Part shown: positions 12,013 to 29,442 of the stretch, piece after piece
Position numbering within the stretch: position 1 is the first letter of the stretch
Layout of the letters: each line of letters begins with the position of its first letter
IMG/VR virus record: IMGVR_UViG_3300025133_009608
Location: 248,001 to 312,000 of that record
Direction: 5' to 3' (one strand)
Length of the DNA stretch: 64,000 bases
The notes under the pieces: model-generated
The model's input: only the letters and a program-made list of their open reading frames with translations
What the model was told of the DNA's origin: nothing
Database searches by the model: none
Translations under genes and position numbers: made by a program

Positions 12013-12798
12013 TTATATTCCTAAATCTTTCATTTTCTTCTTTACAGAGGTGCAAGTATCTTTTGGTCCGGTTACCGGAAATGATTTATCTTCCAATAAT
12101 TTATGCATCGTATAGTCATTTCCTTCTGGGGTCATTCTATCTCCCCAGTAGTAAACATCGTATTCATTAAAAAATTGCATAGCGTATGTCTTGTCCCAGT
12201 TTTCGGGATAAATATCAAAACTAGTATCACCAGCGATAACGGCCGTAAGCTTTATTCCATTTTCATCTAAAAACTCTTGGAGCTCCCCGGCCCGAATCCC
12301 CCGCAGCCCTCGTTCTGCGTCAATTTCTTTAAACTTATCCCTATCGGCATCAGTTGCCATTCTCCCAATCGGGCACCAGTTTACTGTAGAGCCGCGATAC
12401 GTAATAAACGTCCCGGTTAGTGGAATATCATCGGCATCTTGCATAATTTCAGCTTGGGCGTATACCAGCTCGGTCATCAACTTTCTAAAGGCGACCTCTC
12501 CCAGGTGGGCTCGCAAATCTTCTTCTTTAATAACCTCATAAGAGATTTTTTCATCAGACTTTATAACGTTATAAGCCTTGGTTCCATTACAGGCCAGGGC
12601 ATAAACTTTAAAATCATGCGGCATTGCTAAAAATAACTCTTCGCACTGCTCTTTTAAAAAGTCCATATCCGAACCCGTAAGGATTCCGATCTCGATGGAC
12701 TTATTTGCTTTGGATAATAACTTTATAATCTTTTTTGTAACTTGTTTCCGAGACGCGCAAAGGGTGCCGTCCAGATCAAATAGGAATACTGTTTTCAT
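12013..12798 (-). CDS. Eukaryote-type phosphomannomutase (HAD superfamily, PMM family)
   Basis: LFDLDGTL, ILTGSD, TYRGSTVNWCPIGR, TSFDIYPENWDKTY, YWGDRMTPEGNDY. Confidence 0.9.
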   Translation of the reverse strand: MKTVFLFDLDGTLCASRKQVTKKIIKLLSKANKSIEIGILTGSDMDFLKEQCEELFLAMPHDFKVYALACNGTKAYNVIKSDEKISYEVIKEEDLRAHLGEVAFRKLMTELVYAQAEIMQDADDIPLTGTFITYRGSTVNWCPIGRMATDADRDKFKEIDAERGLRGIRAGELQEFLDENGIKLTAVIAGDTSFDIYPENWDKTYAMQFFNEYDVYYWGDRMTPEGNDYTMHKLLEDKSFPVTGPKDTCTSVKKKMKDLGI

Positions 12799-12799
12799 T

Positions 12800-13654
12800 T
12801 TAAAATAACCTTTTTAAGTCATCATCAGATATATATCTTTCTCCACGATCGCAGATTATGGTTACGACTTCGCCGAAGATGCTTTTATTTAATCTAATTT
12901 GCTCGGCTGCCAGAACATTGGCCGCCGATGAAATACCAACTAGAACTCCCAACTCCCTGGACAGGGATATCATCTTTGACTTTGCATCTTCTGTTTTTAT
13001 CTTAAGTGTTGCATCAGCGTGCTCAGCATTCATCAGGTAATCTCCGCCATCGCCGATTCCCTGAATCCCGTGTTCCTCTTCTTCTGGGCGCATAAATATA
13101 AGCTTTGTATTTAAATCATTTTCTGCAACAAAAGCAGCGATCCCCATCATTGTCCCTCCGGTGCCGGCGCCGGATACAAAGGCTCCCCATGTGCTTTCGC
13201 CTAATTGCCTAAATATCTCTTTTGCGGTTGTATTTTTATGGCATTGTATATTTAGTTTGTTTTCAAATTGCATGGGCGACCAAGCCCCCGCGGCTACAAG
13301 TTCATTTCTATACTTTATGGCTCCGGCGAAATCATATGGAGCAACTTCAATAATTTCAGCTCCAAAGAACCTCATCATGCTTCGCCTTTCTTCGGACATG
13401 TTAGACGGCATTATGATCTTTACCTCGTTCCCCAAGGTTGCCCCAATCGCAGCAAGAGATATGCCGGTATTCCCGGAGGTCGCCTCAACCAATATAGTGT
13501 CTTTCGAGATTGCATTATTTTTTAATGCATCTTCTACGATATATGAGATGATTCTATCTTTTATTGAGCCCGTGGGGTTATAGGTCTCAAGCTTTACAAG
13601 AATTCCGGACCTAAGTCTAACTAATGGTGTGTTTCCAATTAATTGTTTGAGCAT
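12800..13654 (-). CDS. cysK: Cysteine synthase-like PLP-dependent enzyme (CysK/CysM family)
   Basis: IGNTPLV, KLETYNPTGSIKDR (PLP lysine), EATSGNTGISLA, MSEERR, GAGTGGT, IQGIG, GISSAAN, DRGERY. Confidence 0.85.
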   Translation of the reverse strand: MLKQLIGNTPLVRLRSGILVKLETYNPTGSIKDRIISYIVEDALKNNAISKDTILVEATSGNTGISLAAIGATLGNEVKIIMPSNMSEERRSMMRFFGAEIIEVAPYDFAGAIKYRNELVAAGAWSPMQFENKLNIQCHKNTTAKEIFRQLGESTWGAFVSGAGTGGTMMGIAAFVAENDLNTKLIFMRPEEEEHGIQGIGDGGDYLMNAEHADATLKIKTEDAKSKMISLSRELGVLVGISSAANVLAAEQIRLNKSIFGEVVTIICDRGERYISDDDLKRLF

Positions 13655-13688
13655 TTAGTCCCCCATAACTATACTCAAATATGGAAAA

Positions 13689-14606
13689 TTAATATGAGTA
13701 GCTCGTCCCTAAGATTTTTTCTTCTATATTTTTGACCGGAGAATAGCCGAGAATTCCTTTAATCTTATCTATATTGGCGAGAGAGTGCTTTACGTCGCCT
13801 AATCGTTCGGCTTTAAATATTGGAGGCATAAGATCTAAAATCTCACAAAGCTGTAAAAGCGACATATTTTCCCCCCTGGCTACGTTGAAGGCTTCCCCAT
13901 TTAACTTTTCAGGATGCTCTGCCGCCAATATGTTCGCAGAAACAACACTTTCAACGGGGCAAAAATCTCGACTCTGCATTCCATCGCCATAAATTGTTGG
14001 ACGAACATTGTTTCTCTTGCAGACCGAAAACGCGGGCAAAACGGCCGCATAAGCCGAATCGGGGCGCTGCCTTGGCCCGATCACATTAAAATATCGCAAA
14101 CATGCGGTATCTAATCCCATTTCGGATGCATATAGTCGGCAATACCGCTCACCTGTTAGCTTCTGGAGAGCATATGGGGACCGAGGGTTGGGCTCGTCGC
14201 TCTCGCAGTTAGGAGGGCCGTCAGAGCCACCGTAAATAGACGATGAAGAAGAAAATACAAATCTTTCAACCTTATATTTTCTGGATAACTCCAAAAGCCT
14301 TACCGTTCCGTTTATATTTGTAAAATCAGAGAAAACCGGATTCTCAACGGAGGGGGCTACTCCAGACTTTGCGGCAAGATGAAACACGTACTTGATTTTA
14401 TGATTCTGAAAGGCTCTTTCTAGGTTATCAGAAGTTATATCATAAAGAGCCGGAATAAAATTTTCATGCCCAATATGAGATTCCAGAGTTGTTTGCAATC
14501 CAGAGCTTAAATTATCAACACCAATAACTTTATACTTATTGAGTAATTCGTCCGTAAGGTGTCCGCCGATAAACCCCGCAGATCCGGTAACTAATACTGT
14601 ATCCAT
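13689..14606 (-). CDS. NAD-dependent UDP-sugar 4-epimerase (WbpP/GalE-like SDR)
   Basis: VTGSAGFIG, FSSSSSIYG, YALQK (YxxxK), LRYFNVIGPRQRPDSAYAAV, GDGMQSRDF. Confidence 0.9.
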   Translation of the reverse strand: MDTVLVTGSAGFIGGHLTDELLNKYKVIGVDNLSSGLQTTLESHIGHENFIPALYDITSDNLERAFQNHKIKYVFHLAAKSGVAPSVENPVFSDFTNINGTVRLLELSRKYKVERFVFSSSSSIYGGSDGPPNCESDEPNPRSPYALQKLTGERYCRLYASEMGLDTACLRYFNVIGPRQRPDSAYAAVLPAFSVCKRNNVRPTIYGDGMQSRDFCPVESVVSANILAAEHPEKLNGEAFNVARGENMSLLQLCEILDLMPPIFKAERLGDVKHSLANIDKIKGILGYSPVKNIEEKILGTSYSY

Positions 14607-14623
14607 TTTATAATTCCTTTCAC

Positions 14624-15285
14624 TTAAAACTTATATCCGAAATAATCTATATCTTTAGAATAAAGCTTTCGAATGAATTCTACCATTTCCTCATCATAAT
14701 AATCCTGGTATTTGTTGTTAAATTTTCGGTATGACGTTTTGAATTTTGGCAAACTTTTAGAATCAAACCTTCCAAGTTGTAATTTGTCAAAAACAACTGC
14801 TATATCATTATGTAAGTTTTCATATTTAATGTAGAAGTCACAAACTGGCTTGTCGTCTATAGTGTGAAGCTCCCAGTTGTTTAATTCTGACGCGTGCTTC
14901 TTCGAAAACAACTTAAATAAAGTCTTTGCATCGGCGAATTTATTAGCCTCCAGCTCTCTGCCTCCCACAAACCAGAATAAAGAAACGGCCCTATCCCACG
15001 GATTTCTTACGGCGGAAAATTTATAGTATGAATCAAATAATTCCGGTCCGATTTCCTTCTTTATCTTTGATGCGGGGCTATGCGGCCGCCACTGAGACCT
15101 CTTATTTATCCCATTCATTCTTCCTGCGATTATTCCATATTTTGATTCTTGCATATTGACAGAATCACCATTTTTTATGCTCTGCTTGGGGCCTATGCAA
15201 TATTTCTGAAAGACGCCTTCGACAGAACTTCCTCCGACTTTTTTATTCTTAATGTAAATGAACTTTTTCGATGTGATATTAGCAT
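14624..15285 (-). CDS. Sulfotransferase family 2 protein interrupted by a -1 frameshift near its 5' end
   Basis: ATG 15285 directly follows the upstream TAA and reads MLISHRK. The -1 frame continues KFIYIKNKKVGGSSVE (5'-PSB-like motif) into the track ORF with RNPWDRAVSLF and YSKDIDYFGYKF. The shift is at an A5 run (forward T5 at 15264-15268). Confidence 0.8.
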
Positions 15286-16098
15286 TTAATCTTCGATAAT
15301 ATTTATAGAATCGGGCCTTAGTATATTCTTGGACTCAACCGCGGCCTCCAAGACTTTGCATATAGACTTTTCCCTCTTCATTTGCGCCAGAAGGGCATTT
15401 GTATCCTTCGGGAAGCAATGTCCAGAATAACTAAGTCCACCATCGGGGCCTGGAACATTTGTATGCATCTTTTCAACCCACGGGCCGAGCATTAAGTCTC
15501 TTACATTATTATAATCTATTCCAAGAGAATTGCATAGAAGATAATATTCATTAAATATTGAAACCTTAACGCTGTAATAGCAATTTCTCATAATCTTCAT
15601 TGCCTCCGACTCATCAGAAGTGCAGGCCGCGATTCTTGCCGACGGGTATAGTCTCTTATAGAACAATATCAGCCTATCGAACAGCTCAGACTTGCTAGAG
15701 CTTCCAATAACTATGTAATCTTGATTGTGAAAATCTTCAAATGCCGTTCTTTCGGTTAAAAACTCTGGATTATGAGCAATATTAAGCCCATACTTATTTG
15801 CCAGCGTCTTGGTTACACCGATTTCAACAGTAGACTTTATAACACAGAGCCCCTTGTAGTTGTTCTTTTTTAAAAGTTCAAGATTCTCTTCGATCGCAGA
15901 TAAGTCGAAGTGCTTGCCGCTTATAAATGGAGTCGGAAGGCAGAGAAACAGAATATCCGAATCTAGGACTGAATTAATCGTTCCTATTTTTTGAAACTTG
16001 TCGTATATAGCTGTGGTTACGCCATTTATTTTAAACGACTTATGCAATGCACTGCCAACAAAGCCATTCCCTATCTGTGCAATTCTCATCGTCATCAT
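15286..16098 (-). CDS. UDP-glucose/UDP-GlcNAc 6-dehydrogenase family protein, short form lacking the C-terminal domain
   Basis: IGNGFVG, FLCLPTP, IKSTV, NPEFLTE, E-x-x-K...N, YSGHCFPKD catalytic Cys motif; 270 aa. Confidence 0.85.
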   Translation of the reverse strand: MMTMRIAQIGNGFVGSALHKSFKINGVTTAIYDKFQKIGTINSVLDSDILFLCLPTPFISGKHFDLSAIEENLELLKKNNYKGLCVIKSTVEIGVTKTLANKYGLNIAHNPEFLTERTAFEDFHNQDYIVIGSSSKSELFDRLILFYKRLYPSARIAACTSDESEAMKIMRNCYYSVKVSIFNEYYLLCNSLGIDYNNVRDLMLGPWVEKMHTNVPGPDGGLSYSGHCFPKDTNALLAQMKREKSICKVLEAAVESKNILRPDSINIIED

Positions 16099-16562
16099 TC
16101 CTTCCTACCGTTTAGGCGCGGGAAGCCTGCACTTTTATCGCCTGAAGCCCCAATAAATTTTATTATCTTCTCGGTAACGTCCTTATCTTTGAATATATCC
16201 AAGATCAAGAGCCTATCCATGGCGCCTGCGTCGGAAAAGGTCTTTATAACATCGCGATGGAACTCGAGCATATCGGGAAGCCCCTCGTGATTAGAGAACC
16301 GCCTCACCGAGCGTGTCCAGGCTGCACTGTCCCTGATGGTTAATATAAATCCGCTGCTATTCGACTCGGCCAGCAGCTCTTCGTATCTTTGGTATAGCGA
16401 ATTATCGATTACCGCAACTGCATCAAGATTTGCGACATTCGGAGTGCCACCGGTGAGCATGCACTTGTGCTCAGACGAAACCCCAAGCTCAAAAAGATAT
16501 GCGGCCAAGCTGGTAGTCCCCGTCCTTGGAAGCCCAATTCCATATATGGCCGTGTAATTCAC
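16095..16562 (-). CDS. Sulfotransferase-like P-loop protein
   Basis: YGIGLPRTGTTSL, FILTIRD...W...S, RLLILD...FIG...FP pattern of the sulfotransferase family 4-like group. Confidence 0.7.
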   Translation of the reverse strand: MNYTAIYGIGLPRTGTTSLAAYLFELGVSSEHKCMLTGGTPNVANLDAVAVIDNSLYQRYEELLAESNSSGFILTIRDSAAWTRSVRRFSNHEGLPDMLEFHRDVIKTFSDAGAMDRLLILDIFKDKDVTEKIIKFIGASGDKSAGFPRLNGRKE

Positions 16563-17452
16563 ATCACGCTCTTTGCGATTTCATTGACCACCACTAGAGA
16601 CTCCATTGCATCGTCTATTCCGAACCCGTTGCCAGATAATACTTCTTTATACGAAATTGTATGCAAATCTGTGAATCCGCCGCTAAACTCAACACTTTGG
16701 TTGTCAATCGTTATTTTTCTAAAAGCAGGCTGACCGGCAGCGATAGATTCTTTTGGAAGATCATTTTCATCCGTACTCAGCCTCCATTTTACGTTTGCTC
16801 TCTCTAGAATCAGGGTTCCAGAGACGCTTGATGAATACTTGCTTTCGACTATGTTTTCAACCGGCGACCCAAAAATCCATATTAACATATCGAAAAAATG
16901 TATACCAATATTTGCAGCAAGACCTCCCGACTTAGACTCCTGTCCCTTCCATGACTGGCAATACCACTTGCCTCTTGACGTTATATACTCAAGATTTACA
17001 TCGACAACTTTTTTGGAGTTATTATATCGGCTCTTTATGTCTATAATGGCCGGATGATGACGAAGCTGCAAAATGCAATTTACTGTTCTTCCCGTCTCTC
17101 TCTCTATCTCTTTCAAATATTGCAAGTTACCTGCCATTACAACCAGTGGCTTTTCGCAAATAACATCACAATCGTTACGAAGCGCCAGCCTTATATGCGA
17201 ATCATGCAAATAATTTGGCGAACAAATACTTATGTAGTCTATTTTGCCACTTGTTCTTCTCAGCTTGTCGACGTGTCTATCAAATCTCTCGATTTCGGTA
17301 AAAAAATCTGCCCCTGGAAAGTATGAATCAATAATTCCAACGGAATCAAATGGGTCAATTGCCGCTACCAAGTCGCAGTTGTTGTCTTTTATTGCTCGCA
17401 TATGCCGTGGGGCTACATATCCAGCGGCACCGATGAGTCCAAACTTTTTCAC
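16559..17452 (-). CDS. wbpB: UDP-GlcNAcA 3-dehydrogenase (WbpB/WlbA-like Gfo/Idh/MocA oxidoreductase)
   Basis: FGLIGAAGYVAPRHMRAIK...DPFDSVGIIDSYFP...ICSPNYLHDSHI...ICEKPLV...ITSRGKWY..SWKG...KSGG...NIGIHFFD...EFSGGFTDLH closely follows the WbpB pattern. Confidence 0.88.
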   Translation of the reverse strand: MKKFGLIGAAGYVAPRHMRAIKDNNCDLVAAIDPFDSVGIIDSYFPGADFFTEIERFDRHVDKLRRTSGKIDYISICSPNYLHDSHIRLALRNDCDVICEKPLVVMAGNLQYLKEIERETGRTVNCILQLRHHPAIIDIKSRYNNSKKVVDVNLEYITSRGKWYCQSWKGQESKSGGLAANIGIHFFDMLIWIFGSPVENIVESKYSSSVSGTLILERANVKWRLSTDENDLPKESIAAGQPAFRKITIDNQSVEFSGGFTDLHTISYKEVLSGNGFGIDDAMESLVVVNEIAKSVM

Positions 17453-18549
17453 TTTTTACTTCCATAATTAAAGAAAAGATTAATATTATGAGATATATAC
17501 TCCAATTCATCTGCTTTTAGCCCAGGATAAATAGGGAGTGATAAGACCTCATCGCAGGTCTTTCTCGACTCCAGCAGGCCGTCTGAGTCTGCGAACGCCG
17601 AATAGTCACAAAGAGGTGCCGGATAATATATATTCGAGGGGATCCCATTGTTGTATAAAAACTTTTTCAAATCGTCCCTTCGACTTGTTCTTATTGTGAA
17701 CTGATTAAAAGAGTGTAGGCTACATTTCTTTGGCAAAACAATGTTTTCGATATCACCTATAGCATTAAAGTAAAATCTAGCATTCTCCCTTCTCTTTTCA
17801 ATCCATTCGTCCGCTTTCTGAATTAATACTGATAAAAATGCAGCCTGCAATGCATCCAGCCTATAGTTTCCGCCAGTAATTTCATAGTTATACTTTGATG
17901 ACATGCCATGTTTTCTAATCATTCTTAGTCGTTGATCGACCCCCCCGTCGCCCGTGGTAACCGCGCCCCCGTCCCCAAGGCATCCTAGATTTTTTGCCGG
18001 AAAAAAACTAAAACTGCTCGCTATCCCGAAGCTTCCATTTGGGGCACCATAAGATTGAGCACAATCCTCTATAAGATGGATCCCCCTATCTCTGCATGCA
18101 GCCGATAGACTGCTTAGATCGCTATACTCTCCAAACAGGTGAACAAAGATTACCGCCTTCGTAGCTCCCGTGCAAGAGTTCATTATTCCATCGACAGACG
18201 GGGAAAAGGATCCTGGAGCAAGGTCTACAAAAACAGGAGTCAGACCCGCTTTTGAGATAACCGATGCAGATGATATAAACGTAAAAGCCGGGACTATAAC
18301 CTCAGATCCCGGTGGTAAGTCGAGAGATGTTAATATCGCAGTTAATGCGTCTGTGCCGTTCGACACTCCAACGCAATATTTCGACCCAACTTTTCTGGAA
18401 AAAATATCCTCAAAAAGCTCAACTTCGGAGCCTAAGATAAAGTTTCCATGCTCAAGGCACCTCTCCAGGCATCCGACCAGCTCTTTCCTGCTGCCGCTTA
18501 ACATTTTTGAAAAATTAAAAAAATCAATATTTGTATCTATTTTTTCCAA
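17449..18549 (-). CDS. DegT/DnrJ/EryC1/StrS PLP aminotransferase (WbpE/WlbC-like)
   Basis: VSNGTDAL, VPAFTFISS, VHLFG, IEDCAQS, SFFPAKNLGCLGDGG, NYRLDALQAA, LSLPIYP; adjacent to wbpB. Confidence 0.9.
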   Translation of the reverse strand: MEKIDTNIDFFNFSKMLSGSRKELVGCLERCLEHGNFILGSEVELFEDIFSRKVGSKYCVGVSNGTDALTAILTSLDLPPGSEVIVPAFTFISSASVISKAGLTPVFVDLAPGSFSPSVDGIMNSCTGATKAVIFVHLFGEYSDLSSLSAACRDRGIHLIEDCAQSYGAPNGSFGIASSFSFFPAKNLGCLGDGGAVTTGDGGVDQRLRMIRKHGMSSKYNYEITGGNYRLDALQAAFLSVLIQKADEWIEKRRENARFYFNAIGDIENIVLPKKCSLHSFNQFTIRTSRRDDLKKFLYNNGIPSNIYYPAPLCDYSAFADSDGLLESRKTCDEVLSLPIYPGLKADELEYISHNINLFFNYGSKK

Positions 18550-19394
18550 AAAACCTCTCCATTAAATGCTATACTATCGTGCGGAACTTTAAAGATATCG
18601 AGCCATATGTTAAATTGGCAAAAAAACATTTTCTGCCTCTTGCTTTTCGGCTCCACCGCGAACCCCTTTGCTCTCAATGCCTCGACGTGCTTGTCAATTA
18701 TGTCGTGGTCTACCCACTCCATAATAAAGCCACTTTTATCTCTAAATACAAAGTCTTTAGAGAAATCTTCTAAAAGTAATTCTTTTATTATCTTTTTGCC
18801 AAAAGACTCTTTGTTGTATTCTTGCAAATCACGATCCAAGAATGGGTACCGTCCTTCGATGTCAAATTTTAAGCCCATTTTATCATTTTTCCGAAGGTGA
18901 TGAAAAATAAGAAGATTCTTATCGTGATGTAGCTTGTCCTGGTTGGTTTTCGCAGAAATCTCTGCGAAAAGCCCTCTGGGATACTCTTCCGTGTCATAAT
19001 ATGAGTACCCGCCATATAACTCATCGGATCCTAGTCCGCTTATGCTTACTCTTTTTTGTTTTTTATTAATCTCACGATAAAGAAAATATCCAACCGATAC
19101 CCAGTAAAACGGCTCCTCCCATATTCTCACTATTTCATATAAATAATCTTCAAAAGAGTCTATCCTGTGAGAGAAGTAATGTACATTTATTCCATATTTA
19201 TCTTCAACAATTTTAGCATACTTATCGTCGCCATAGCACAAGAAGAGGCAATCCTCTTCTCGCCCTAGCTCGCACACCGCCTTCACTATGAGTGAGCTGT
19301 CGAGCCCTCCCGATAGTGGCACAGCGCAGTTCTTGGTTATCCTTTTTTCGACTGCTATTTTAAAGTTTTTATAGTATTTTTGCGCTACTGACAT
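18537..19394 (-). CDS. Asparagine-synthase-like ATP pyrophosphatase domain (C-terminal half of AsnB/WbpS-like amidotransferase)
   Basis: PLSGGLDSSLI, ISGLGSDELYGGY, DKMGLKFDIEGRYPFLD, RDKSGF. Confidence 0.85.
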   Translation of the reverse strand: MSVAQKYYKNFKIAVEKRITKNCAVPLSGGLDSSLIVKAVCELGREEDCLFLCYGDDKYAKIVEDKYGINVHYFSHRIDSFEDYLYEIVRIWEEPFYWVSVGYFLYREINKKQKRVSISGLGSDELYGGYSYYDTEEYPRGLFAEISAKTNQDKLHHDKNLLIFHHLRKNDKMGLKFDIEGRYPFLDRDLQEYNKESFGKKIIKELLLEDFSKDFVFRDKSGFIMEWVDHDIIDKHVEALRAKGFAVEPKSKRQKMFFCQFNIWLDIFKVPHDSIAFNGEVFWKK

Positions 19395-19896: not shown

Positions 19897-19904
19897 CATA
19901 CACC

Positions 19905-21489: not shown

Positions 21490-21493
21490 TTTG

Positions 21494-23868: not shown

Positions 23869-24791
23869 TACGCTCTATCCTTCAAGAAATTATCAAACAA
23901 GGTTTGAGCCCTGCTGTCCGGGAAGTGATTATCTCTAGCATACTTAGCAATTTTATTATAAGAATATTTATTATTATTTAATTTATTTCCCTTTGAAATC
24001 ATATCTTTCTTTCCGGAAAATACCTCCCCCAAGAATGGATTGCTCATTACTATTTTAGCTTCCGGAATATTTCTCTCAATGAGGACCGGCATTCCGGCAC
24101 CTATGTACTCAAAGAATTTTGACGAACTTTCTCTCTGAAGCTTCTTGCTTCCTAGCGGATAAATTGACGGGACAAACCCAGCAAAGTAGTGGCCACGATT
24201 TAGCTCCTGATAGAGCTTGCTATGGCTTTTCGGCTCCAAAATTAAAGAACCTGGAATTTTAGACTGCACGAATTCTATATTCTCCTTAAATCCTGGAGAG
24301 CTCCTGGTGAATCTCAATATACTTTTCCCTCGCCAGTATTTTATCGGATAAACCCCAAAGCTAATTCCCGAGGCATTCATTGTCTTTATCTTTGCTTCAG
24401 CCAAGGGAGAGAGTCTTCCCAAGTAGGCCATTCGCACCCGGTCCGTGGTGGCTATTTTTATATCCCTATCTCCATGGCAGTAATTCATTAAAATAAACTG
24501 ATTATTTTTTGGAGCAGGGTATGGGGATATCGAGCAGGCTGTATCTACCCCGGTCATATCGAATCCGCACTCGGTAATCTTCAAAGTATATTTCGAACTA
24601 ATCTTTCTCCTTAGAGGCGTTCTGTCAATAATTGCGAAATCATACTTTAAATCATAATCATTAATAAAGGATTCAAATTCACATATTTTATGCAATTCTT
24701 CAACTATCTTTCCAATCTTACATGGAGAGCAGTGATAGAGCCCGCCTCTACCATAGTTGCCGGAATATCTTGAGAAGATTCCAATCCTCAC
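23868..24791 (-). CDS. Putative GT-B glycosyltransferase
   Basis: AYLGRLS and SSKFFEYIGAGMPVL (GT4-like C-terminal motif); within the GT array. Confidence 0.6.
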   Translation of the reverse strand: MRIGIFSRYSGNYGRGGLYHCSPCKIGKIVEELHKICEFESFINDYDLKYDFAIIDRTPLRRKISSKYTLKITECGFDMTGVDTACSISPYPAPKNNQFILMNYCHGDRDIKIATTDRVRMAYLGRLSPLAEAKIKTMNASGISFGVYPIKYWRGKSILRFTRSSPGFKENIEFVQSKIPGSLILEPKSHSKLYQELNRGHYFAGFVPSIYPLGSKKLQRESSSKFFEYIGAGMPVLIERNIPEAKIVMSNPFLGEVFSGKKDMISKGNKLNNNKYSYNKIAKYARDNHFPDSRAQTLFDNFLKDRA

Positions 24792-25726
24792 TTCAATACC
24801 TCTTCGAAAGCTTCGCCCCAGCGCTCTTTGTATTCTTTAATTCCAAACACTTTGATCGCCCTGGCTCGACCGGCCGCGCTCAGCTCCGCTTGCAAATCTT
24901 TTGACCCCAAAATTCTCTTACACGCCGCTAACATATCTTCCTTCGTATCTGCAAAAAGACAGTCTCTCCCGCCCCTTAGGTGCCTGCTTATTCCATGATT
25001 ATTAGTTGTGACTAGCGGAGCCCCGCACATCATTGCCTCGACCCTGCTGCGAGGCATAGCGCTTCGCACAGTGGAATTCAGGCAAACCCCATACTTATTA
25101 TATTTTTGCACTAATTTCTTTAACGGAAAGTTTCCAATACTCTCGGGCAGGTCCTCGTCTCCATGGCCAACCAAGTCGCACAAGCCAGTCTTTTCGGAGA
25201 CATACCTCCACTCATCAAATCCTAATATTGCCCCTCTTTTTTCGAATACATTCGCTACGGTCAAGATCCTATCATTTCTTTTCAGCTTCATATCGCAAAA
25301 TTCATCCGGATCAAATCCGTGGGGGATGTAAAAATGTTTTTTTCCAGGCAAGTTTTTATAATTCTTATCCATCGCATATTTGGAATTCCACACAACCACT
25401 CTGGCCCACCTTGGAATAGAAAAGGGAGCATCCGTCTGAACTACGGCAATTCCCGGTGCGCGATGCCTTCTTCGAAATGGCTCAAGCCTTTTTGCTCCCG
25501 GTGACACGCGAACCATAATAATATTATATTTTCGCGTCATTAGTGCGCGCTCTTTTGCGGCAACGATGTTCGCCTTATCTCCGCTAATAGCTGGTCGGCC
25601 GAAGTCCTCATCGGTCGGGGCACGGCCGTTGAGTTTGGTGCACCAAAATCGAGGACCAGTCTTAAAGAACTCATATTGATGCCCGCCATGAACGAGCCAA
25701 TCCATAATTTCCAATTTTTCAACCAT
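24788..25726 (-). CDS. GT4-family glycosyltransferase
   Basis: IPHGFDPDEF, PRSRVEAMMCGAPLVTT, GRARAIKVF. Confidence 0.8.
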   Translation of the reverse strand: MVEKLEIMDWLVHGGHQYEFFKTGPRFWCTKLNGRAPTDEDFGRPAISGDKANIVAAKERALMTRKYNIIMVRVSPGAKRLEPFRRRHRAPGIAVVQTDAPFSIPRWARVVVWNSKYAMDKNYKNLPGKKHFYIPHGFDPDEFCDMKLKRNDRILTVANVFEKRGAILGFDEWRYVSEKTGLCDLVGHGDEDLPESIGNFPLKKLVQKYNKYGVCLNSTVRSAMPRSRVEAMMCGAPLVTTNNHGISRHLRGGRDCLFADTKEDMLAACKRILGSKDLQAELSAAGRARAIKVFGIKEYKERWGEAFEEVLK

Positions 25727-26831
25727 AGTTTTTAAACCGATCTTTCTTTAAAATTTCTTCAATTCTACTCCCGACGGCCTCTATTGTCATGGTTTTTGAT
25801 ATATTTTTTGCGTTAATGACCTTGTCGGCTATGTCTTCGTTATTCTCGAATACGTTTCTCATATTTTTGCGCAAAGAAGAGGTGGAGGGATATGCCCAAT
25901 TCTGAGTCTTATTGTATAATGGCTGCCAGCCCATGCCCTTCACTGGGCCGATTTTGTGAGCAATTATATTTGCGCTATTTTCATCTAAAAATTCTGTTAT
26001 CCCGCCGAACTTTGTAGTTATCAAATGATTCCCGGCCTCAATGGCATCATGAATCGGCATCCCCCATCCTTCGCCGCGATGCGGAGCCACATAGCAGTCG
26101 CCATAATTATGAATTGCTTTAATTTGCTCAAATGGAATTTTTTCGTCAATTAAGTATACTTTTGGATAAAACTTTTTATTTAGTCTTCTCTTTATATTTA
26201 TAATATCAAGATAAATCTGCTCTTTTTTGTACTTATCCGGATCGAGCTTGCTGGTTTTTATAAGCAATAAAACCTTATCCTTCCGGGCGAACTCGTTGTA
26301 ATAGGCCGTTAGTAGCTCTTTGTACCCCTTTCTCTCGTGCCATTGAAATATAGAATAAAACTTAAATACATCATCCGATATTAAAAGCTCAGAAGTTGCC
26401 GGGGACGGAACCGCCACAGTTAGCGCTGAGGAGCTCCAGATGGACGGGGTTGGCACGACCTCTATGTGACCTTTAAAGCCAGCCCTGCGACAGGCTGTGG
26501 CGACCAGTTCGCATGGTGCCCATATCTCATCCAAAAACTTTATAGAACTACGCCAAGGCGTGGGCAAAGCATCCGCCTCCCAGTAGAAATAGCCTATTTT
26601 ATAATTATTTGACTTATGCTGGCTAAAGGGTGGCATATTCAAATATAAATCAATTTTGGGCGAACCAGAAAAGTTATTTAGCTTGATGTTAAAATCCGAA
26701 GGGCTTGAGCTTAATTCAAATTTTGTATTTACATCCGACCCAGACAACGCGAGTGCAAAAGCTCTACTGGCATTTGCATACCCAGAGGGGCCCGAGGTTT
26801 TTGCGAAATATCTTATTGAAGGCAGAGGCAT
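25719..26831 (-). CDS. GT4-family glycosyltransferase
   Basis: SGYANASR, YFYWEAD, QWHERKGYKELLTAY, APHRGEGWGMP. Confidence 0.82.
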   Translation of the reverse strand: MPLPSIRYFAKTSGPSGYANASRAFALALSGSDVNTKFELSSSPSDFNIKLNNFSGSPKIDLYLNMPPFSQHKSNNYKIGYFYWEADALPTPWRSSIKFLDEIWAPCELVATACRRAGFKGHIEVVPTPSIWSSSALTVAVPSPATSELLISDDVFKFYSIFQWHERKGYKELLTAYYNEFARKDKVLLLIKTSKLDPDKYKKEQIYLDIINIKRRLNKKFYPKVYLIDEKIPFEQIKAIHNYGDCYVAPHRGEGWGMPIHDAIEAGNHLITTKFGGITEFLDENSANIIAHKIGPVKGMGWQPLYNKTQNWAYPSTSSLRKNMRNVFENNEDIADKVINAKNISKTMTIEAVGSRIEEILKKDRFKNYG

Positions 26832-28354
26832 CAGACGTACCTACCCACTAGAATCTCAGAATCTCCATCATTTCTCTTGTAAAATACAGAATCCGGAAGA
26901 ACCCCAGATAAAAACTTAGCGGATATATCCTTTATATCATGATTATCTCTAACATACTTTGATGCAGCTCTAACTACATCGCTATTTTCGATATTTTCAG
27001 ATATCAATAAAGCATTTTCAGATTCAATATCACCGATAAAAAATCCATTAACTCCATTCGAAATAATATCTGGAATCCCTCCAACTTTAGGCATAAAAAC
27101 CGGAACTCCGGATGCCATAGCTTCAAGCATTGAAATGGGAGTTCCTTCCATTGTTGATGTAGAGAGAAATGCATCAAATAATGAGTAATATTTATGCACA
27201 TCCCTCTTATGTCCGAAAAACCTAACGTTCTCCCCTGCGGCCTGCCTTAGTCGTCCAAGCTCGGGGCCGGAGCCTATAATTAAAAAGGTAAAATCCTTCA
27301 TTTTTTTAGCAATATCTAAAACTCTATCTATATTTTTCTCAGATGAAAGCCTTGAAACAACTCCCACAGTCGGCCGATTGATTGGAAGATTATTTTGGAC
27401 CCGAAACTCTCTCCCATCCCGATTGCAAAATCTGTCTAGATCGATCCCAACTGGTATAGTTGTGACTCTATTCTCTTCGACTCCTTCGATATCAAGACAC
27501 AAAGATGATGATACTTTAAATATCTGATCAACTCCTCTTCTCGACTTTATGCTCGAGACCGAATCAGACCACTCGAAGTCGCTATGATAAATTTCAATTA
27601 TTCTAGATGATATCGCACCAGTAGACACCAGCGCAGAGATCTTCTCGTAAACCCTTTTGCTATTATAATAAATAACAACATCGTAACCTCTTGAGGAGAT
27701 AAGCGCCCCGAGACGATCAACGCCGCCAACCCTGGTGTGCTTTACTCTCTTATTGCTGCAAGCTCCGACGAGCGGATTTTTCCCAAGATATAGTAGTTCT
27801 ATAGAAAGCATTTTGGAGTCTATATTGTCCAATATGCTCTTTATATATATCTCTGCCCCTCCATAAATTCCATACGGGATGACGATGGCCAATGTGCTTG
27901 GGTCGGCGGTCCCAAATCTCGAAAGCAACTCTAGATCTGTTCGTTTTATGCTATTTTGTTTGCTCTTTTTCTTTTTTATCGGAAGCGCTCGGCTCGAAGA
28001 TATGACGACTCTTCCAATTTCCACTCCACCGATTGCCCCACCGGGTCTAGTTATTCTTATTTTTCCAAAAAAAGGCTCCGGCGCAGAAATCGGAAAAGAA
28101 GACTCCGACCAACTCGTGCTAGATAGTGAAATTTTTTCATCCAACAATATTATATTATCTTTCGACAAAATCTGGAGCCTCGCTGGGCCGTTTCCCGAGC
28201 GCTTCCGCCCTATAACCTTTATCCTTCCTTCGGCCGGTATCCTTGCCGGGTGCTCTGCGATTCCCCTGGGATTTAAATGAACGGTCTTCTCTGTCCCAAC
28301 ACGAATCCCGCTTCCAAACCATTTAAAATCCCTAGCGGAGTCGAAATCTCTCAT
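26831..28354 (-). CDS. GT4-family glycosyltransferase with extra N-terminal beta-sandwich-like domain
   Basis: YGGAE, PVGIDL, VSRLSSEKN, STMEGTPISMLEAMASGVPV. Start moved to ATG 28354, which makes an ATGA overlap with the upstream stop. Confidence 0.85.
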   Translation of the reverse strand: MRDFDSARDFKWFGSGIRVGTEKTVHLNPRGIAEHPARIPAEGRIKVIGRKRSGNGPARLQILSKDNIILLDEKISLSSTSWSESSFPISAPEPFFGKIRITRPGGAIGGVEIGRVVISSSRALPIKKKKSKQNSIKRTDLELLSRFGTADPSTLAIVIPYGIYGGAEIYIKSILDNIDSKMLSIELLYLGKNPLVGACSNKRVKHTRVGGVDRLGALISSRGYDVVIYYNSKRVYEKISALVSTGAISSRIIEIYHSDFEWSDSVSSIKSRRGVDQIFKVSSSLCLDIEGVEENRVTTIPVGIDLDRFCNRDGREFRVQNNLPINRPTVGVVSRLSSEKNIDRVLDIAKKMKDFTFLIIGSGPELGRLRQAAGENVRFFGHKRDVHKYYSLFDAFLSTSTMEGTPISMLEAMASGVPVFMPKVGGIPDIISNGVNGFFIGDIESENALLISENIENSDVVRAASKYVRDNHDIKDISAKFLSGVLPDSVFYKRNDGDSEILVGRYV

Positions 28355-29442
28355 ACTAGGTCCAAGATTTGATTTGCTGCATTTTCCCAAGTAAACTTTT
28401 TGAGCGTCTCTTTTCTTTCATCCGAGAATTCATCTAAAATTATAGCCTTATTGAGATACATGCGCTTCATCTTATCGGCCAGGTCTTCAACCTCTGGGAC
28501 CCATATTTTTGCCCCGGGGGATGCCCTCCAGTATTGATACTTATCTCCGGCAGCAATCTCTCTGACATCTACGAGCAAGCTATTTTTCTCATTTAAAAAG
28601 TCTAGATGGCCAGAACAATTTGGAGCTATAACCGGAAGACCAGCGGCCATTGCCTCTAAAAACGGAAGGCCGAATCCCTCTGCCGAAGTTGCGCTAACAA
28701 GCGAATCACAAGAATTATAAAGAGGAATCAGGCTGTCATACTTTCTTTGTACGATTTCAATCTGAGGAAGACTTTTTCCTTTGTGCTTTTTTTGTACTTT
28801 TACAATCTCTTTTGCAATATCACATTCAAATTTAAATTTTGGCTTCTTCAGAGAGGTCTTTATTATCAGGCAAACGTCATCGGAAGCAGAAAATGCAGAA
28901 TAATAAGCATCAACCAGCATTCCTATGTTTTTTCTGTGATGCGCTATAGACACGTTAAGAAACTTAAATGATTTATTGGTCTTGATCGAATCTAACTTGT
29001 CTTTTCGGTCAAAATCTTCAATATTTATTCCATGAGGAACCACTATGCATTTATCTTCAGGCCAGCCAGATTCTACAAATACCTTTTTAGAGTATGAACT
29101 CGACGGCAAGACGTAATCCACATGCTTTATCTCGGGGAGCCAAACCCCCGGTAGGATACTGGACTCGTAATTATATATTGCAAGCTTTAAGTTTGACTTG
29201 CCGCGAAATCGCTCTTTAAAGTTCCGAGGGAGGGTATATGTGATGTCTATGTCCGGATCTTTGACCTCTCTCTTTGTCTTTTTCATCCAATCTGGCGGAA
29301 ACATTTCATACCCGTTTATTGAATTAAGATATAAGTCATGACCCTTTGCATCAAACTGAGCAAGAAGGCTTCTGATTGTTACGGCCCAGCTATGGCTGGT
29401 TCCGAGCATGGCTTTGCTTCTGATCTTTAACGTCTTGGGCAT
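28351..29442 (-). CDS. GT4-family glycosyltransferase
   Basis: HSWAV, YNYESS, VPHGIN, HHRKNIG, EGFGLPFLEAMAAGLPVI, FTWENAA. Confidence 0.85.
   Translation of the reverse strand: MPKTLKIRSKAMLGTSHSWAVTIRSLLAQFDAKGHDLYLNSINGYEMFPPDWMKKTKREVKDPDIDITYTLPRNFKERFRGKSNLKLAIYNYESSILPGVWLPEIKHVDYVLPSSSYSKKVFVESGWPEDKCIVVPHGINIEDFDRKDKLDSIKTNKSFKFLNVSIAHHRKNIGMLVDAYYSAFSASDDVCLIIKTSLKKPKFKFECDIAKEIVKVQKKHKGKSLPQIEIVQRKYDSLIPLYNSCDSLVSATSAEGFGLPFLEAMAAGLPVIAPNCSGHLDFLNEKNSLLVDVREIAAGDKYQYWRASPGAKIWVPEVEDLADKMKRMYLNKAIILDEFSDERKETLKKFTWENAANQILDLV

What the first reader, a model, noticed from the sequence alone, without database searches (positions are those of the whole stretch)
12013..29442. Soluble, flippase-free glycan factory beside the baseplate genes: probable virion glycosylation with diacetamido-uronic, amidated, sulfated sugars
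Seen: 20 consecutive co-oriented genes: PMM, CysK, 4-epimerase, 6-dehydrogenase, WbpB-like oxidase, WbpE-like aminotransferase, two hexapeptide acyltransferases, split AsnB, a methyltransferase, two sulfotransferases and 7 GT genes (8 GT domains). No Wzx/Wzy/ABC exporter, undecaprenyl-P transferase or oligosaccharyltransferase, and no obviously multi-TM protein. Established: WbpA-WbpB-WbpE-WbpD convert UDP-GlcNAc to UDP-GlcNAc3NAcA (P. aeruginosa O5, Bordetella), AsnB-like WbpS-type enzymes amidate uronic acids, and chloroviruses and mimiviruses glycosylate virion proteins with their own cytoplasmic enzymes. Inference: a tailed phage builds a complex anionic glycan on capsid/tail proteins (camouflage, adhesion or stability), far larger than the few GTs usually described in phages.
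Basis: partly seen in the sequence, partly recalled or inferred. Interest (0 to 1): 0.78.

Follow-up and report, generated by a model that had tools for sequence, protein, structure and literature searches.

The report
Huge-phage tail-linked acidic glycan factory
An uncultured 317-kb marine phage carries, straight after its baseplate genes, four conserved sugar-adding enzymes followed by a swappable set of genes for acidic sugars, with no membrane export machinery; this most likely coats part of the virus particle with sugars, but the target is not proven.

Summary
Window 12013-29442 is 20 tightly packed minus-strand genes. They encode a strong WbpB, a sugar 3-aminotransferase, two hexapeptide acyltransferases, a split AsnB, a methyltransferase, two sulfotransferases, PMM-like and CysK-like enzymes, an SDR epimerase, a C-terminally truncated NDP-sugar dehydrogenase, and 7 GT genes with 8 GT domains. 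No polytopic membrane protein occurs here. The same scan found one in 24 of 35 cellular WbpB loci and in 0 of 249 ORFs in related phage loci.

The cluster has two tiers. GTa-GTd (24788-29442) are core genes. In 22 of 22 close relatives they directly follow the same two giant acidic post-baseplate proteins. GTa follows the 1517-aa protein's homologue in about 21 of 26 distant huge phages and co-diverges with it (r=0.92). The rest (12013-24791) is a hypervariable cassette. Relatives carry Kdo and nonulosonic-acid pathways, a sialyltransferase, a pyruvyltransferase or other sulfotransferases instead. Every cassette I annotated carries at least one gene for an acidic decoration.

Cytoplasmic glycosylation of a virion component is the best reading (about 0.5). 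Host-surface remodelling and DNA glycans are not excluded. I rate it a new variant of a known kind.

The parts
28351..29442 (-). GTa: core GT4 glycosyltransferase, first gene after the 1517-aa structural gene (51-nt gap)
   Evidence: Pfam Glyco_trans_1_4, Glycos_transf_1 and GT4-conflict. EX7E motif conserved in 39/39 and 37/39 homologues. Follows the FIB homologue in 22/22 close and about 21/26 distant loci. Co-diverges with FIB, r=0.92. At least 375 protein clusters match; the best 120 listed are from metagenome or environmental collections, with a few also held by NCBI under no name, and their longest contigs are at most 420 kb.
26831..28390 (-). GTb: core GT4 (519 aa)
   Evidence: Glycos_transf_1 E 2e-25. 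29-43% identical homologues in the same position in close relatives.
25719..26831 (-). GTc: core GT4, paralogue of GTa
   Evidence: Pfam. 24% identical to GTa. Conserved position.
24788..25726 (-). GTd: core GT-B glycosyltransferase, last conserved gene
   Evidence: Glyco_trans_1_2 E 2e-11. 39-64% identical homologues in relatives.
23868..24791 (-). GT-B-like protein (307 aa), first gene of the variable cassette
   Evidence: Weak Pfam Glyco_trans_1_2 hit, E 0.003. Shared only with L017, 43% identity.
22486..23868 (-). Double GT-A glycosyltransferase (residues 1-225 and 235-460)
   Evidence: Atlas structure and feature hits to GT2. The N half is 62% identical to a 225-aa L017 protein. The C half is 35% identical to the 332-aa GT-A.
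21970..22485 (-). Hexapeptide acyltransferase 2 (LpxA-like)
   Evidence: Hexapep E 8e-19. PDB 8e62 and LpxA.
21494..21970 (-). Hexapeptide N-acetyltransferase 1 (WbpD/WlbB/QdtC-like)
   Evidence: Hexapep E 4e-33. Nearest solved structures are sugar 3-N-acetyltransferases 4mzu, 3fs8 and 3mqg.
20491..21489 (-). GT-A glycosyltransferase (residues 84-332) with an 80-residue polybasic N-terminus
   Evidence: No Pfam hit. Atlas feature score 0.98 and TM 0.94 to phage GT2-like clusters.
19905..20501 (-). SAM-dependent methyltransferase
   Evidence: Methyltransf_11/12/23. Best NCBIfam match is the pseudaminic-acid-associated methylase, below cut-off.
19369..19908 (-). AsnB-type glutaminase (Ntn) subunit; likely start at GTG 19896, giving Met-Cys-Gly
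   Evidence: GATase_7 E 8e-26. DNA read. Logan gene call of 175 aa.
18537..19394 (-). AsnB-type synthetase (PP-loop SGGLDS) subunit; overlaps the glutaminase ORF by 26 nt
   Evidence: Asn_synthase E 1e-23. Junction read. The split is identical in five assemblies.
17449..18549 (-). DegT-family sugar aminotransferase (WbpE/QdtB-like)
   Evidence: DegT E 5e-86. Nearest solved structures include sugar 3-aminotransferases QdtB and WbpE, E 5e-61. 4-nt overlap with the WbpB gene.
16559..17452 (-). WbpB-type UDP-GlcNAcA 3-dehydrogenase
   Evidence: Full-length match to PDB 3oa2 (WbpB), E 2e-96. Cellular homologues 53-60% identical. No orthologue in 50,697 GenBank phage records.
16095..16562 (-). Small sulfotransferase (Sulfotransfer_4-like, PRTGTTS loop)
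   Evidence: Pfam E 6e-11. Sequence. GC3 0.55, an outlier in the cluster.
15286..16098 (-). Short NDP-sugar 6-dehydrogenase-like protein (270 aa; no C-terminal UDP-sugar domain)
   Evidence: UDPG_MGDP_dh_N plus central domain only. Aligns to residues 73-282 of a 393-aa UGDH, with the catalytic Cys present. 262-277-aa homologues in L010, L017 and L033.
14624..15285 (-). Sulfotransfer_2 sulfotransferase; called ORF is 14624-15154, with the PAPS-binding loop in frame upstream
   Evidence: Pfam E 1e-7. The L017 homologue (209 aa) aligns into 15155-15265. ATC at 15277 sits where its Met is. An alternative is ATG 15285 plus a -1 slip on an A5 run.
13689..14606 (-). SDR NDP-sugar epimerase (TviC/GalE-like)
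   Evidence: Epimerase E 3e-57. Best NCBIfam match is TviC, below cut-off.
12800..13654 (-). CysK/CysM-like PLP enzyme; role in the pathway unknown
   Evidence: PALP E 8e-56. cysKM subfamily 247 bits, below cut-off. SIKDR and TSGNTG motifs present.
12013..12798 (-). Eukaryotic-type phosphomannomutase (HAD-IIB), last gene of the cluster
   Evidence: PMM E 2e-32. DLDGT motif.
29494..34047 (-). FIB1517 (my label): conserved, very acidic 1517-aa beta-rich protein with a central dockerin-like Ca-binding module; candidate acceptor or partner
   Evidence: Collinear 38-54% identical homologues, plus 25-32% identical shorter ones. Profile hits to dockerins, E 3e-7. AF2 model of residues 1-1000, pLDDT 83.9. 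Net charge -142. No PHROG hit.
34102..44520 (-). GIANT (my label): 3472-aa acidic protein with a ConA-like lectin domain near the C-terminus; lies just after the baseplate-J gene
   Evidence: Laminin_G_3 E 8e-10. Homologues in all related loci. Occupies the position of phage G gp189.
44523..47831 (-). Baseplate wedge (gp6/Baseplate_J) protein
   Evidence: Pfam E 8e-26. phrog_6 E 6e-43. 31.6% identical to phage G gp188.
47841..48272 (-). gp25-like sheath initiator
   Evidence: Pfam Sheath_initiator E 2e-6, below cut-off.
5364..7187 (-). GlmS (glutamine-fructose-6-P aminotransferase), likely precursor supply for UDP-GlcNAc; outside the cluster
   Evidence: GATase_6/7 plus two SIS domains.

Best explanation
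This is a cytoplasmic glycosylation system of a huge contractile-tailed marine phage that works without a lipid carrier. It sits at the end of the tail/baseplate gene block and most likely decorates a virion component. The best candidates are the two very acidic giant proteins encoded just upstream.

The system has two tiers:
- Four conserved GT4/GT-B enzymes (GTa-GTd) would lay down a conserved inner glycan on a conserved phage acceptor.
- A swappable cassette supplies lineage-specific nucleotide sugars, further GTs and tailoring enzymes for an acidic outer part.

In this phage the inferred cassette pathway is:
1. UDP-GlcNAc supply is boosted by the phage GlmS.
2. UDP-GlcNAc is oxidised to the uronic acid. 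The enzyme for this step is doubtful.
3. WbpB oxidises the sugar at C3.
4. A WbpE-like enzyme transaminates it.
5. A WlbB/WbpD-like enzyme N-acetylates it, giving a 2,3-diacetamido uronic acid.
6. Optional steps follow: 4-epimerisation, amidation by the split AsnB, methylation, a second acylation and sulfation.

What is shown: gene content, absence of membrane machinery, synteny, co-divergence and cassette turnover. What is inferred: the sugar structures, the order of action, and above all the acceptor.
For: 1. Family assignments are solid.
2. No polytopic membrane protein occurs in the cluster, the window, 18 kb beyond it, or the cassettes of relatives: 0 of 249 ORFs. The same scan finds at least one in 24 of 35 cellular WbpB loci. 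No signal peptides are present.
3. The order GIANT -> FIB1517 -> GTa -> GTb -> GTc -> GTd occurs in 22/22 close relatives that have enough downstream DNA. GTa lies within four genes of the FIB homologue in about 21/26 distant lineages.
4. GTa co-diverges with FIB (r=0.92, Mantel 0/2000, 35 lineages) and is more conserved than FIB in 82% of pairs. Its EX7E catalytic motif is kept. The best 120 listed relatives come from metagenome or environmental collections, on contigs of at most 420 kb. So it is a vertically inherited phage core enzyme and not a moron.
5. The gap between FIB and GTa is 51 nt with no terminator-like site in it, and start/stop overlaps run through the cluster.
6. The cassette turns over: 45 of 68 families are singletons among 15 genomes. 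Every cassette I annotated carries at least one gene for an acidic decoration: Kdo and nonulosonic acid, GT29 sialyltransferase, pyruvyltransferase, sulfotransferases, or the uronic-acid dehydrogenase-like gene.
7. Cassette composition matches the rest of the phage: GC3 0.42, tetranucleotide r=0.90.
8. Precedents exist. Mycobacteriophage capsid and tail-tube glycosylation by phage GTs is cited in PMC12619734. Megavirinae have clade-specific 6-33-gene fibril glycosylation clusters (PMC10117803).
Against: - No acceptor is shown.
- FIB1517 and GIANT have no Ser/Thr-rich tracts of the kind glycosylated in mycobacteriophages.
- All seven GTs are net basic. That fits acidic protein acceptors, but it also fits anionic membranes or DNA.
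- The enzymes are classic O-antigen types with 53-60% identical cellular homologues.
- Comparable jumbo-cyanophage clusters have been read as host-surface modification (PMC7824862, PMC12801897).
- About 240 kb of the genome was not seen, so a flippase, a PGT or a hydroxymethyl-pyrimidine pathway could lie there.
- No RNA run holding this DNA was listed, so co-transcription and timing are untested.
- The structural role of FIB1517 and GIANT rests on gene position and weak domain hits.
Confidence: 0.5

Rival explanations
1. Host-surface remodelling. The soluble phage GTs and sugar pathways feed the host's own undecaprenyl-phosphate machinery (initiating transferase, flippase, polymerase or ligase). 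This changes LPS or capsule during infection, masking receptors against superinfection or stopping progeny from sticking to debris.
For: The enzymes are O-antigen types (WbpB, WbpE-like, WlbB-like, TviC-like, AsnB-like). Cellular homologues are 53-60% identical and sit in loci with polytopic membrane proteins. GTs that act on lipid-linked acceptors are usually soluble and basic, as these are. Cassette polymorphism resembles O-antigen loci. This is the published reading for jumbo-cyanophage clusters (PMC7824862, PMC12801897).
Against: Not one of about 45 related loci carries a flippase, polymerase or PGT. The four core GTs are vertically inherited core genes. They are more conserved than the neighbouring structural protein, and their listed relatives lie only on phage-sized metagenomic contigs. 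That is unlike accessory conversion genes. Their fixed position after the same structural gene across 25-30% identity divergence is hard to explain if the acceptor is a host lipid.
Confidence: 0.2
2. DNA hypermodification. The GTs build glycans on hydroxymethylated pyrimidines of the phage DNA to block restriction and other nucleases.
For: Phage GT-A and GT-B enzymes put mono- to trisaccharides on 5hmC, including Kdo and uronic acids, and such clusters can lie near structural genes (bioRxiv 10.1101/2023.12.21.572611). The GTs here are basic, and one has an 80-residue polybasic N-terminus. Relatives' cassettes make CMP-Kdo.
Against: No cytosine C5-methyltransferase, TET/5mYOX or dNMP hydroxymethylase occurs in the 64-kb window or in 18 kb beyond it. 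Eight GT domains plus sulfation, methylation and amidation far exceed any DNA glycan reported in that preprint. The tight co-inheritance is with a baseplate-side protein and not with replication genes.
Confidence: 0.08
3. Another target. The glycan may be made as a free or non-covalently bound polymer, for example held on the particle by the lectin-like domain of the giant protein. It may instead be put on a non-virion protein such as the phage tubulin-like protein.
For: GIANT carries a ConA-like lectin domain. This genome encodes a GT fused to a TubZ-like tubulin, and in five distant lineages a TubZ-like gene closes the GT cluster. No acceptor motif was found in the giant proteins.
Against: There is no primer, synthase or export function for a free polymer. 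The GT-tubulin fusion lies outside the cluster and is a different GT. Nothing links it directly to GTa-GTd.
Confidence: 0.15

Closest known systems
Mycobacteriophage virion O-glycosylation (Che8, Corndog, Myrna; Freeman et al. 2023, as cited in PMC12619734 and PMC12801897; details from my own knowledge, paper not held)
   Same: Phage-encoded soluble GTs act in the cytoplasm on virion proteins, and the GT genes belong to the phage.
   Different: Those phages have a few GTs and little sugar-nucleotide biosynthesis. Their acceptors are the C-termini of capsid and tail-tube subunits. Here there are 8 GT domains, a full acidic-sugar pathway and a position after baseplate-distal giant proteins, and the acceptor is unknown.
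Megavirinae clade-specific fibril glycosylation clusters (PMC10117803)
   Same: The virus encodes both nucleotide-sugar pathways for rare bacterial-type amino sugars and the GTs. Clusters hold 6-33 genes. Content differs by clade. No host ER/Golgi or lipid-carrier route is involved.
   Different: Those are eukaryotic giant viruses whose acceptors (fibril proteins) are experimentally known. Here the virus is a tailed phage, with a fixed four-GT core plus a variable cassette and acidic or sulfated chemistry.
Jumbo cyanophage sugar clusters (P-SSM2 15-gene cluster, S-SCSM2R 13 GTs and 22 'cell wall' genes; PMC7824862, PMC12801897)
   Same: Large clusters of soluble GTs with epimerases, Kdo enzymes and UDP-glucose dehydrogenase occur in phages over 200 kb. 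They are polymorphic between relatives, and the target has not been tested.
   Different: Those clusters are described as sporadic and are not reported as fixed to a structural gene. Here a core of GTs is vertically inherited with a baseplate-side protein. No WbpB orthologue was found in deposited phage genomes.
Wbp/Wlb pathway for UDP-2,3-diacetamido-2,3-dideoxy-uronic acids in P. aeruginosa and Bordetella O-antigens (PMC10622841)
   Same: A WbpB orthologue (E 2e-96) sits next to a sugar 3-aminotransferase, and a 3-N-acetyltransferase-like hexapeptide enzyme is present.
   Different: The WbpA-like dehydrogenase lacks its UDP-sugar domain. There is no WbpI 2-epimerase. There is no WbpL/Wzx/Wzy/WaaL context. 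The setting is a phage.
Phage DNA glycan hypermodification clusters (bioRxiv 10.1101/2023.12.21.572611)
   Same: Phage GT-A and GT-B enzymes work with sugar-activating enzymes, acidic sugars are used, and the clusters sometimes lie near structural genes.
   Different: Those clusters are defined by an adjacent C5-methyltransferase and 5mYOX, which are absent here. Their glycans reach at most a trisaccharide.

Membership tests
Wbp/Wlb UDP-GlcNAc3NAcA / ManNAc3NAcA pathway | WbpB-type UDP-GlcNAcA 3-dehydrogenase | tested here: met
   Full-length phmmer match to WbpB structures 3oa2 (E 2e-96) and 3o9z (E 2e-88). The next-best GFO family hit is E 2e-8.
Wbp/Wlb UDP-GlcNAc3NAcA / ManNAc3NAcA pathway | WbpE-type 3-aminotransferase coupled to WbpB | tested here: inconclusive
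   The nearest solved structures include sugar 3-aminotransferases (QdtB E 2e-70, WbpE E 5e-61). It is no closer to WbpE than to the others. The gene overlaps the WbpB gene by 4 nt.
Wbp/Wlb UDP-GlcNAc3NAcA / ManNAc3NAcA pathway | WbpD/WlbB 3-N-acetyltransferase | tested here: inconclusive
   Hexapeptide enzyme 21494-21970 is nearest to 3-N-acetyltransferases (WxcM-like E 2e-18, QdtC, WlbB E 2e-11), a family-level match only.
Wbp/Wlb UDP-GlcNAc3NAcA / ManNAc3NAcA pathway | WbpA three-domain UDP-GlcNAc 6-dehydrogenase | tested here: not met
   The only candidate is 270 aa. It has the NAD and central domains and the catalytic Cys but no C-terminal UDP-sugar domain. The host enzyme may substitute.
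Wbp/Wlb UDP-GlcNAc3NAcA / ManNAc3NAcA pathway | WbpI UDP-sugar 2-epimerase | tested here: not met
   No 2-epimerase family hit in the window. The product would therefore stay in the gluco configuration, or galacto if the SDR 4-epimerase acts.
Wzx/Wzy- or ABC-dependent O-antigen/capsule locus | Initiating polyprenyl-phosphate transferase, flippase or ABC exporter, polymerase or ligase (polytopic membrane proteins) | tested here: not met
   Kyte-Doolittle scan, 19-aa window at 1.6 or above. No segments in any cluster protein. 0 of 249 ORFs in related phage loci have 4 or more segments, against 24 of 35 cellular WbpB loci with at least one. No matching Pfam family. The unseen 240 kb of the genome was not tested.
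Phage virion protein glycosylation (mycobacteriophage type) | Phage GT genes genetically tied to virion structural genes | tested here: met
   Synteny and co-divergence of GTa with the post-baseplate 1517-aa protein.
Phage virion protein glycosylation (mycobacteriophage type) | Glycans covalently bound to virion proteins | not testable with these tools
   This needs virions or co-expression followed by mass spectrometry.
Phage virion protein glycosylation (mycobacteriophage type) | Ser/Thr-rich acceptor extension on the modified protein | tested here: not met
   No 40-aa window with 45% or more Ser+Thr in FIB1517 or GIANT. The capsid and tail-tube genes are not in the window.
Phage DNA glycan hypermodification cluster | Adjacent cytosine C5-methyltransferase and 5mYOX/TET, or a dNMP hydroxymethylase | tested here: not met
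   None found by Pfam in the window or in the 18 kb beyond its left end. The one methyltransferase is of a small-molecule type. The rest of the genome was not seen.
Virus clade-specific glycosylation toolbox (Megavirinae type) | Clustered virus-encoded nucleotide-sugar pathways plus GTs whose content differs between clades | tested here: met
   Cassette content differs among 15 genomes, with 45 of 68 families singletons. Different acidic-sugar pathways were annotated.

The most novel reading that the evidence does not exclude
The glycan, and not a protein tip, may be the lineage-specific surface determinant of these phages. FIB1517 and GIANT have no hypervariable receptor-binding end. The adjacent cassette is hypervariable, and every cassette I annotated carries at least one gene for an acidic decoration, several of them sulfotransferases. 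The virion could display an algal-polysaccharide-like 'bait' that the glycan-capturing outer-membrane proteins of marine Bacteroidota bind, so host range would change by swapping sugar cassettes. A phage cytoskeletal (TubZ-like) filament, genetically linked to GTs, might organise this glycosylation.
Probability: 0.08. Interest if true: 0.92.

Novelty: new variant of a known kind. Interest (0 to 1): 0.62.

Why it matters
Glycosylation of tailed-phage particles has been demonstrated in mycobacteriophages, and to my knowledge hardly anywhere else. Large sugar clusters in jumbo phages have been assumed to act on the host surface.

This work defines a widespread, uncultured clade of huge aquatic phages in which a catalytically intact GT core is inherited together with baseplate-side giant proteins. 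The core is followed by a swappable acidic-sugar cassette with no export machinery. That makes the question 'what do jumbo-phage sugar clusters glycosylate?' directly testable, with a small conserved set of genes (FIB1517 plus GTa-GTd).

If the target is the virion, huge phages would have a Megavirinae-like 'glycan coat toolbox'. That would bear on adsorption, particle stability, grazing and sinking in the ocean. It would also provide soluble enzymes for making rare diacetamido, amidated and sulfated sugars.

Tried and rejected
- Megablast of 24 kb against 50,697 phage records found no match. tblastn with FIB1517 also found none. No cultured relative is available to lean on.
- PHROGs gave nothing for five of the six tail-side proteins searched; only the baseplate J protein matched.
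- The Atlas search for FIB1517 gave only sub-threshold leads.
- An AF2 model of FIB1517 residues 1-1000 was obtained (pLDDT 83.9).
- The profile search of PDB sequences found only the dockerin-like module and nothing for the C-terminal part.
- No RNA run holding this DNA was listed.
- The promoter and terminator scans were close to shuffled expectation and gave no operon boundary.
- No tRNA genes and no Rfam matches were found.
- Host inference from WbpB homologues is weak. Polaribacter and Bacteroidales are top at 59-60%, but many phyla reach 53-58%.
- I could not test whether this lineage equals the 'moraphages', which have four GT orthogroups in their core genome (PMC12619734). The text of that paper that I searched lists mostly freshwater phages under BioSample-style names and holds no IMG/VR contig names.
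- I rejected assembly error as the cause of the split AsnB, the odd sulfotransferase start and the short dehydrogenase, because five assemblies from different sources agree.
- I found no sign of a chimeric contig, because composition is uniform across the cassette, core and structural genes.

Full report
**What the window is.** The window corresponds to positions 248001-312000 of a 316,664-bp IMG/VR viral contig (JGI sample 3300025133). The same DNA is also assembled in other JGI, ENA and Logan data sets from marine metagenomes. Nearly every large ORF from 63983 down to 2044 is on the minus strand.

The right-hand part encodes a contractile-tail module:
- a 2554-aa protein with a hydrophobic core, like a tape-measure protein;
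- a gp25-like sheath initiator;
- a Baseplate_J/gp6 protein, whose best cultured match is Bacillus phage G gp188 at 31.6% identity;
- two giant acidic ORFs of 3472 aa (GIANT) and 1517 aa (FIB1517). These are my own labels.

The gene order parallels phage G, which runs TMP, four genes, wedge, then a large protein. There is no nucleotide-level match in 50,697 deposited phage genomes. This is therefore a huge phage without cultured relatives.

**Checking the observation.** The 20 ORFs between 12013 and 29442 are real, co-oriented and tightly packed, with many 4-nt start/stop overlaps.
- The GFO/IDH/MocA protein is a clear WbpB: a full-length match to 3oa2 at E 2e-96, against E 2e-8 for the next family member.
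- The nearest solved relatives of the DegT enzyme include sugar 3-aminotransferases (QdtB, WbpE).
- One hexapeptide enzyme groups with 3-N-acetyltransferases (WxcM-like, QdtC, WlbB). The other is LpxA-like.
- The '6-dehydrogenase' has the NAD-binding and central domains and the catalytic Cys. It stops at 270 aa, without the UDP-sugar-binding domain. This short form is conserved at 49-62% identity in three other lineages, so it is not a pseudogene, but its activity is open.
- AsnB is truly split into a glutaminase ORF and a synthetase ORF that overlap by 26 nt. The glutaminase ORF most likely starts at GTG 19896, which places Cys after the initiator Met. The synthetase ORF carries SGGLDS.
- The Sulfotransfer_2 gene has its PAPS-binding loop in frame upstream of the called ATG, with no ATG, GTG or TTG available. 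An ATC codon sits exactly where a relative has its Met. Alternatively, an ATG overlapping the previous stop could reach the frame by a -1 slip on an A5 run.
- These three oddities are identical in five assemblies from different sources.
- The 332-aa protein with no Pfam hit is a GT-A with a polybasic N-terminus.
- The 460-aa protein is two GT-A domains. The count of seven GT genes and eight GT domains therefore holds.

**No membrane machinery, with a control.** A Kyte-Doolittle scan finds no TM-like segment in any cluster protein and no signal-peptide-like N-terminus. The same scan was applied to 35 cellular loci centred on WbpB homologues. It finds at least one ORF with four or more TM-like segments in 24 of them. 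It finds none among 249 ORFs downstream of the FIB1517 homologue in about 60 phage loci. The 18 kb beyond the window's left end contains only a MotA/ExbB-like protein and two single-pass proteins. About 240 kb of the genome was not examined.

**The cluster has two tiers.** Searches with the GTs and with FIB1517 recovered about 45 distinct related loci from IMG/VR contigs of up to 473 kb.
- In all 22 close relatives with enough downstream DNA (FIB1517 38-54% identical), the order is GIANT, FIB1517, GTa, GTb, GTc, GTd.
- In a more distant group, the FIB homologue is 25-32% identical and 920-1280 aa long. There, a GTa homologue (29-38% identical) lies within four genes downstream in about 21 of 26 loci. 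It is followed by GT2 genes and often by an SDR epimerase.
- GTa keeps its EX7E motif in 39/39 and 37/39 sequences.
- Pairwise identities of GTa and of FIB track each other (r=0.92, Mantel 0/2000, 35 lineages). GTa is the more conserved of the two in 82% of pairs.
- GTa has at least 375 relatives in the protein collection. The best 120 listed come from metagenome or environmental collections, a few also held by NCBI under no name, on contigs of at most 420 kb.
- WbpB behaves differently. It has 53-60% identical cellular homologues in many phyla and no orthologue among deposited phages.

Downstream of GTd, gene content turns over. Among 15 genomes, 45 of 68 protein families are singletons, and most of this window's cassette (12013-24791) is unique to it. 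Other cassettes encode:
- NeuB, a CMP-nonulosonate cytidylyltransferase, KdsA, KdsB, a KdsD-like SIS protein, methyltransferases and a sulfotransferase (L007, L011, L028);
- a GT29 sialyltransferase (L016);
- a polysaccharide pyruvyltransferase (L022);
- sulfotransferases with methyltransferases (L010, L030).

Every cassette I annotated thus carries at least one gene for an acidic decoration. Cassette composition matches the rest of the phage.

**What it most likely does.** The enzymes imply a cytoplasmic pathway to a 2,3-diacetamido uronic acid. The Wbp scheme is set out in PMC10622841. Amidation, methylation, extra acylation and sulfation would follow, and eight GT domains would assemble the glycan. 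The phage GlmS (5364-7187) plausibly raises UDP-GlcNAc supply. All of this chemistry is inferred from family membership.

The acceptor is the open point. I favour a virion component at about 0.5, for four reasons:
- the GT core is a vertically inherited core function fixed to a baseplate-side gene across deep divergence;
- no lipid-carrier or export function accompanies it in any lineage;
- the gap between the structural gene and GTa is 51 nt, without a terminator-like site;
- viruses with their own cytoplasmic glycosylation of particle proteins are known, namely mycobacteriophages and the clade-specific Megavirinae clusters (PMC10117803).

FIB1517 and GIANT are the obvious candidates. They are extremely acidic (net -142 and -220), whereas all seven GTs are basic. 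FIB1517 is a beta-rich multidomain protein with a conserved dockerin-like module. GIANT has a ConA-like lectin domain. Neither has Ser/Thr-rich tracts, and neither has a hypervariable tip.

**Rivals.**
- Host-surface remodelling through the host's Und-P machinery (about 0.2) is the published reading of jumbo-cyanophage clusters (PMC7824862, PMC12801897). It fits the O-antigen-type enzymes and the basic GTs. It does not explain the core status of GTa-GTd or their fixed structural synteny.
- DNA glycan hypermodification (about 0.08) is a real precedent that includes Kdo and uronic acids (bioRxiv 10.1101/2023.12.21.572611). The defining C5-methyltransferase and 5mYOX are absent from the 82 kb seen, and the machinery here is far larger.
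- A residual class (about 0.15) covers a non-covalently held polymer or a non-virion protein target. One oddity keeps this open. This genome encodes a GT fused to a TubZ-like tubulin, about 10 kb beyond the window's left end, and a homologous stand-alone TubZ-like gene closes the GT cluster in five distant lineages.

**Novelty and verdict.** Large sugar clusters in huge phages, virion glycosylation in phages, and clade-specific glycan toolboxes in giant viruses are all known.

I did not find the following described in the papers I searched:
- the two-tier architecture;
- its inheritance together with a baseplate-side giant protein across a broad uncultured clade;
- the recurrent acidic theme of the cassettes;
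- a WbpB-type diacetamido-uronic pathway in a phage.

A paper on aquatic 'moraphages' notes four GT orthogroups in their core genome without further analysis (PMC12619734). Whether that is the same lineage was not testable here.

I rate this a new variant of a known kind, interest 0.62.

Noticed in passing
window 14624-15285 (-): The Sulfotransfer_2 gene has its PAPS-binding loop in frame upstream of the called ATG (15154), with no ATG, GTG or TTG available. ATC at 15277 aligns with the Met of a 209-aa homologue. Alternatively, ATG 15285 (overlapping the previous stop, TAAATG) could reach the frame by a -1 slip on an A5 run. The sequence is identical in five assemblies.
   Followed up: partly
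window 15286-16098 (-); L010:20692-21525; homologues in L017 and L033: A 262-277-aa NDP-sugar dehydrogenase-like protein has the NAD and central domains and the catalytic Cys but no UDP-sugar-binding C-terminal domain. It is conserved at 49-62% identity in four phage lineages. Its activity is unknown.
   Followed up: partly
L179:12216-14639 (same contig, about 10 kb beyond the window's left end); L090, L091, L092, L094, L095: An 807-aa fusion of an N-terminal GT-B glycosyltransferase with a TubZ-like tubulin GTPase. The tubulin half is 33-43% identical to stand-alone TubZ-like genes that close the FIB-GTa-GT2-SDR cluster in five distant huge-phage lineages. A further 314-aa GT1-like gene sits next to it.
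   Followed up: partly
window 8564-11950 (-), 8025-8387 (-), 7247-8020 (+): Directly after the glycan cluster lie a 1128-aa protein with a PARP-catalytic fragment and a NUDIX domain, a 120-aa protein matching Pfam Acb5, and the only plus-strand gene, a LOG/'lysine decarboxylase'-family (SLOG) protein. This could be a nucleotide-signal or counter-defence islet.
   Followed up: no
window 31957-32148 (-), FIB1517 residues about 634-697: A conserved dockerin-type double Ca-binding module sits inside the 1517-aa post-baseplate protein (profile E 3e-7 to dockerin chains). It is present in both close and distant homologues. No cohesin partner was looked for.
   Followed up: partly
window 38605-39204 (-), GIANT residues about 1773-1972: This stretch of the 3472-aa protein has almost no counterpart in 14 relatives (identity 0.03-0.04), while the rest of the protein, including the C-terminus, is 22-60% conserved. 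It looks like a lineage-specific insert.
   Followed up: no
window 12013-44520 (-): There is a charge split. All seven GT proteins are net basic (+8 to +29, one with an 80-residue polybasic N-terminus). The sugar-nucleotide enzymes are near neutral. The two giant proteins are strongly acidic (-142 and -220).
   Followed up: partly
window 2481-4958 (-): An 825-aa protein whose only hit is a marginal DUF5591 match (a domain known from archaeosine-type tRNA-guanine transglycosylases). No PDB sequence match. Function unknown.
   Followed up: partly
L013:16281-22477 (contig just left of the window): Genes here include a MotA/ExbB-like membrane protein followed by two single-pass proteins (possibly an ExbB/ExbD-like set), a second SDR sugar epimerase/dehydratase, NifU and IscA-type Fe-S assembly genes, and a small cupin of the mannose-6-P-isomerase type.
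   Followed up: no
window 16095-16562 (-): The small Sulfotransfer_4-like gene has GC3 0.55 against about 0.42 for every other part of the window. It may be a more recent acquisition.
   Followed up: no
window 50371-58035 (-): A 2554-aa protein with a cluster of TM-like segments at residues about 1607-1748, in the position of the tape measure protein of phage G. No Pfam hit.
   Followed up: no
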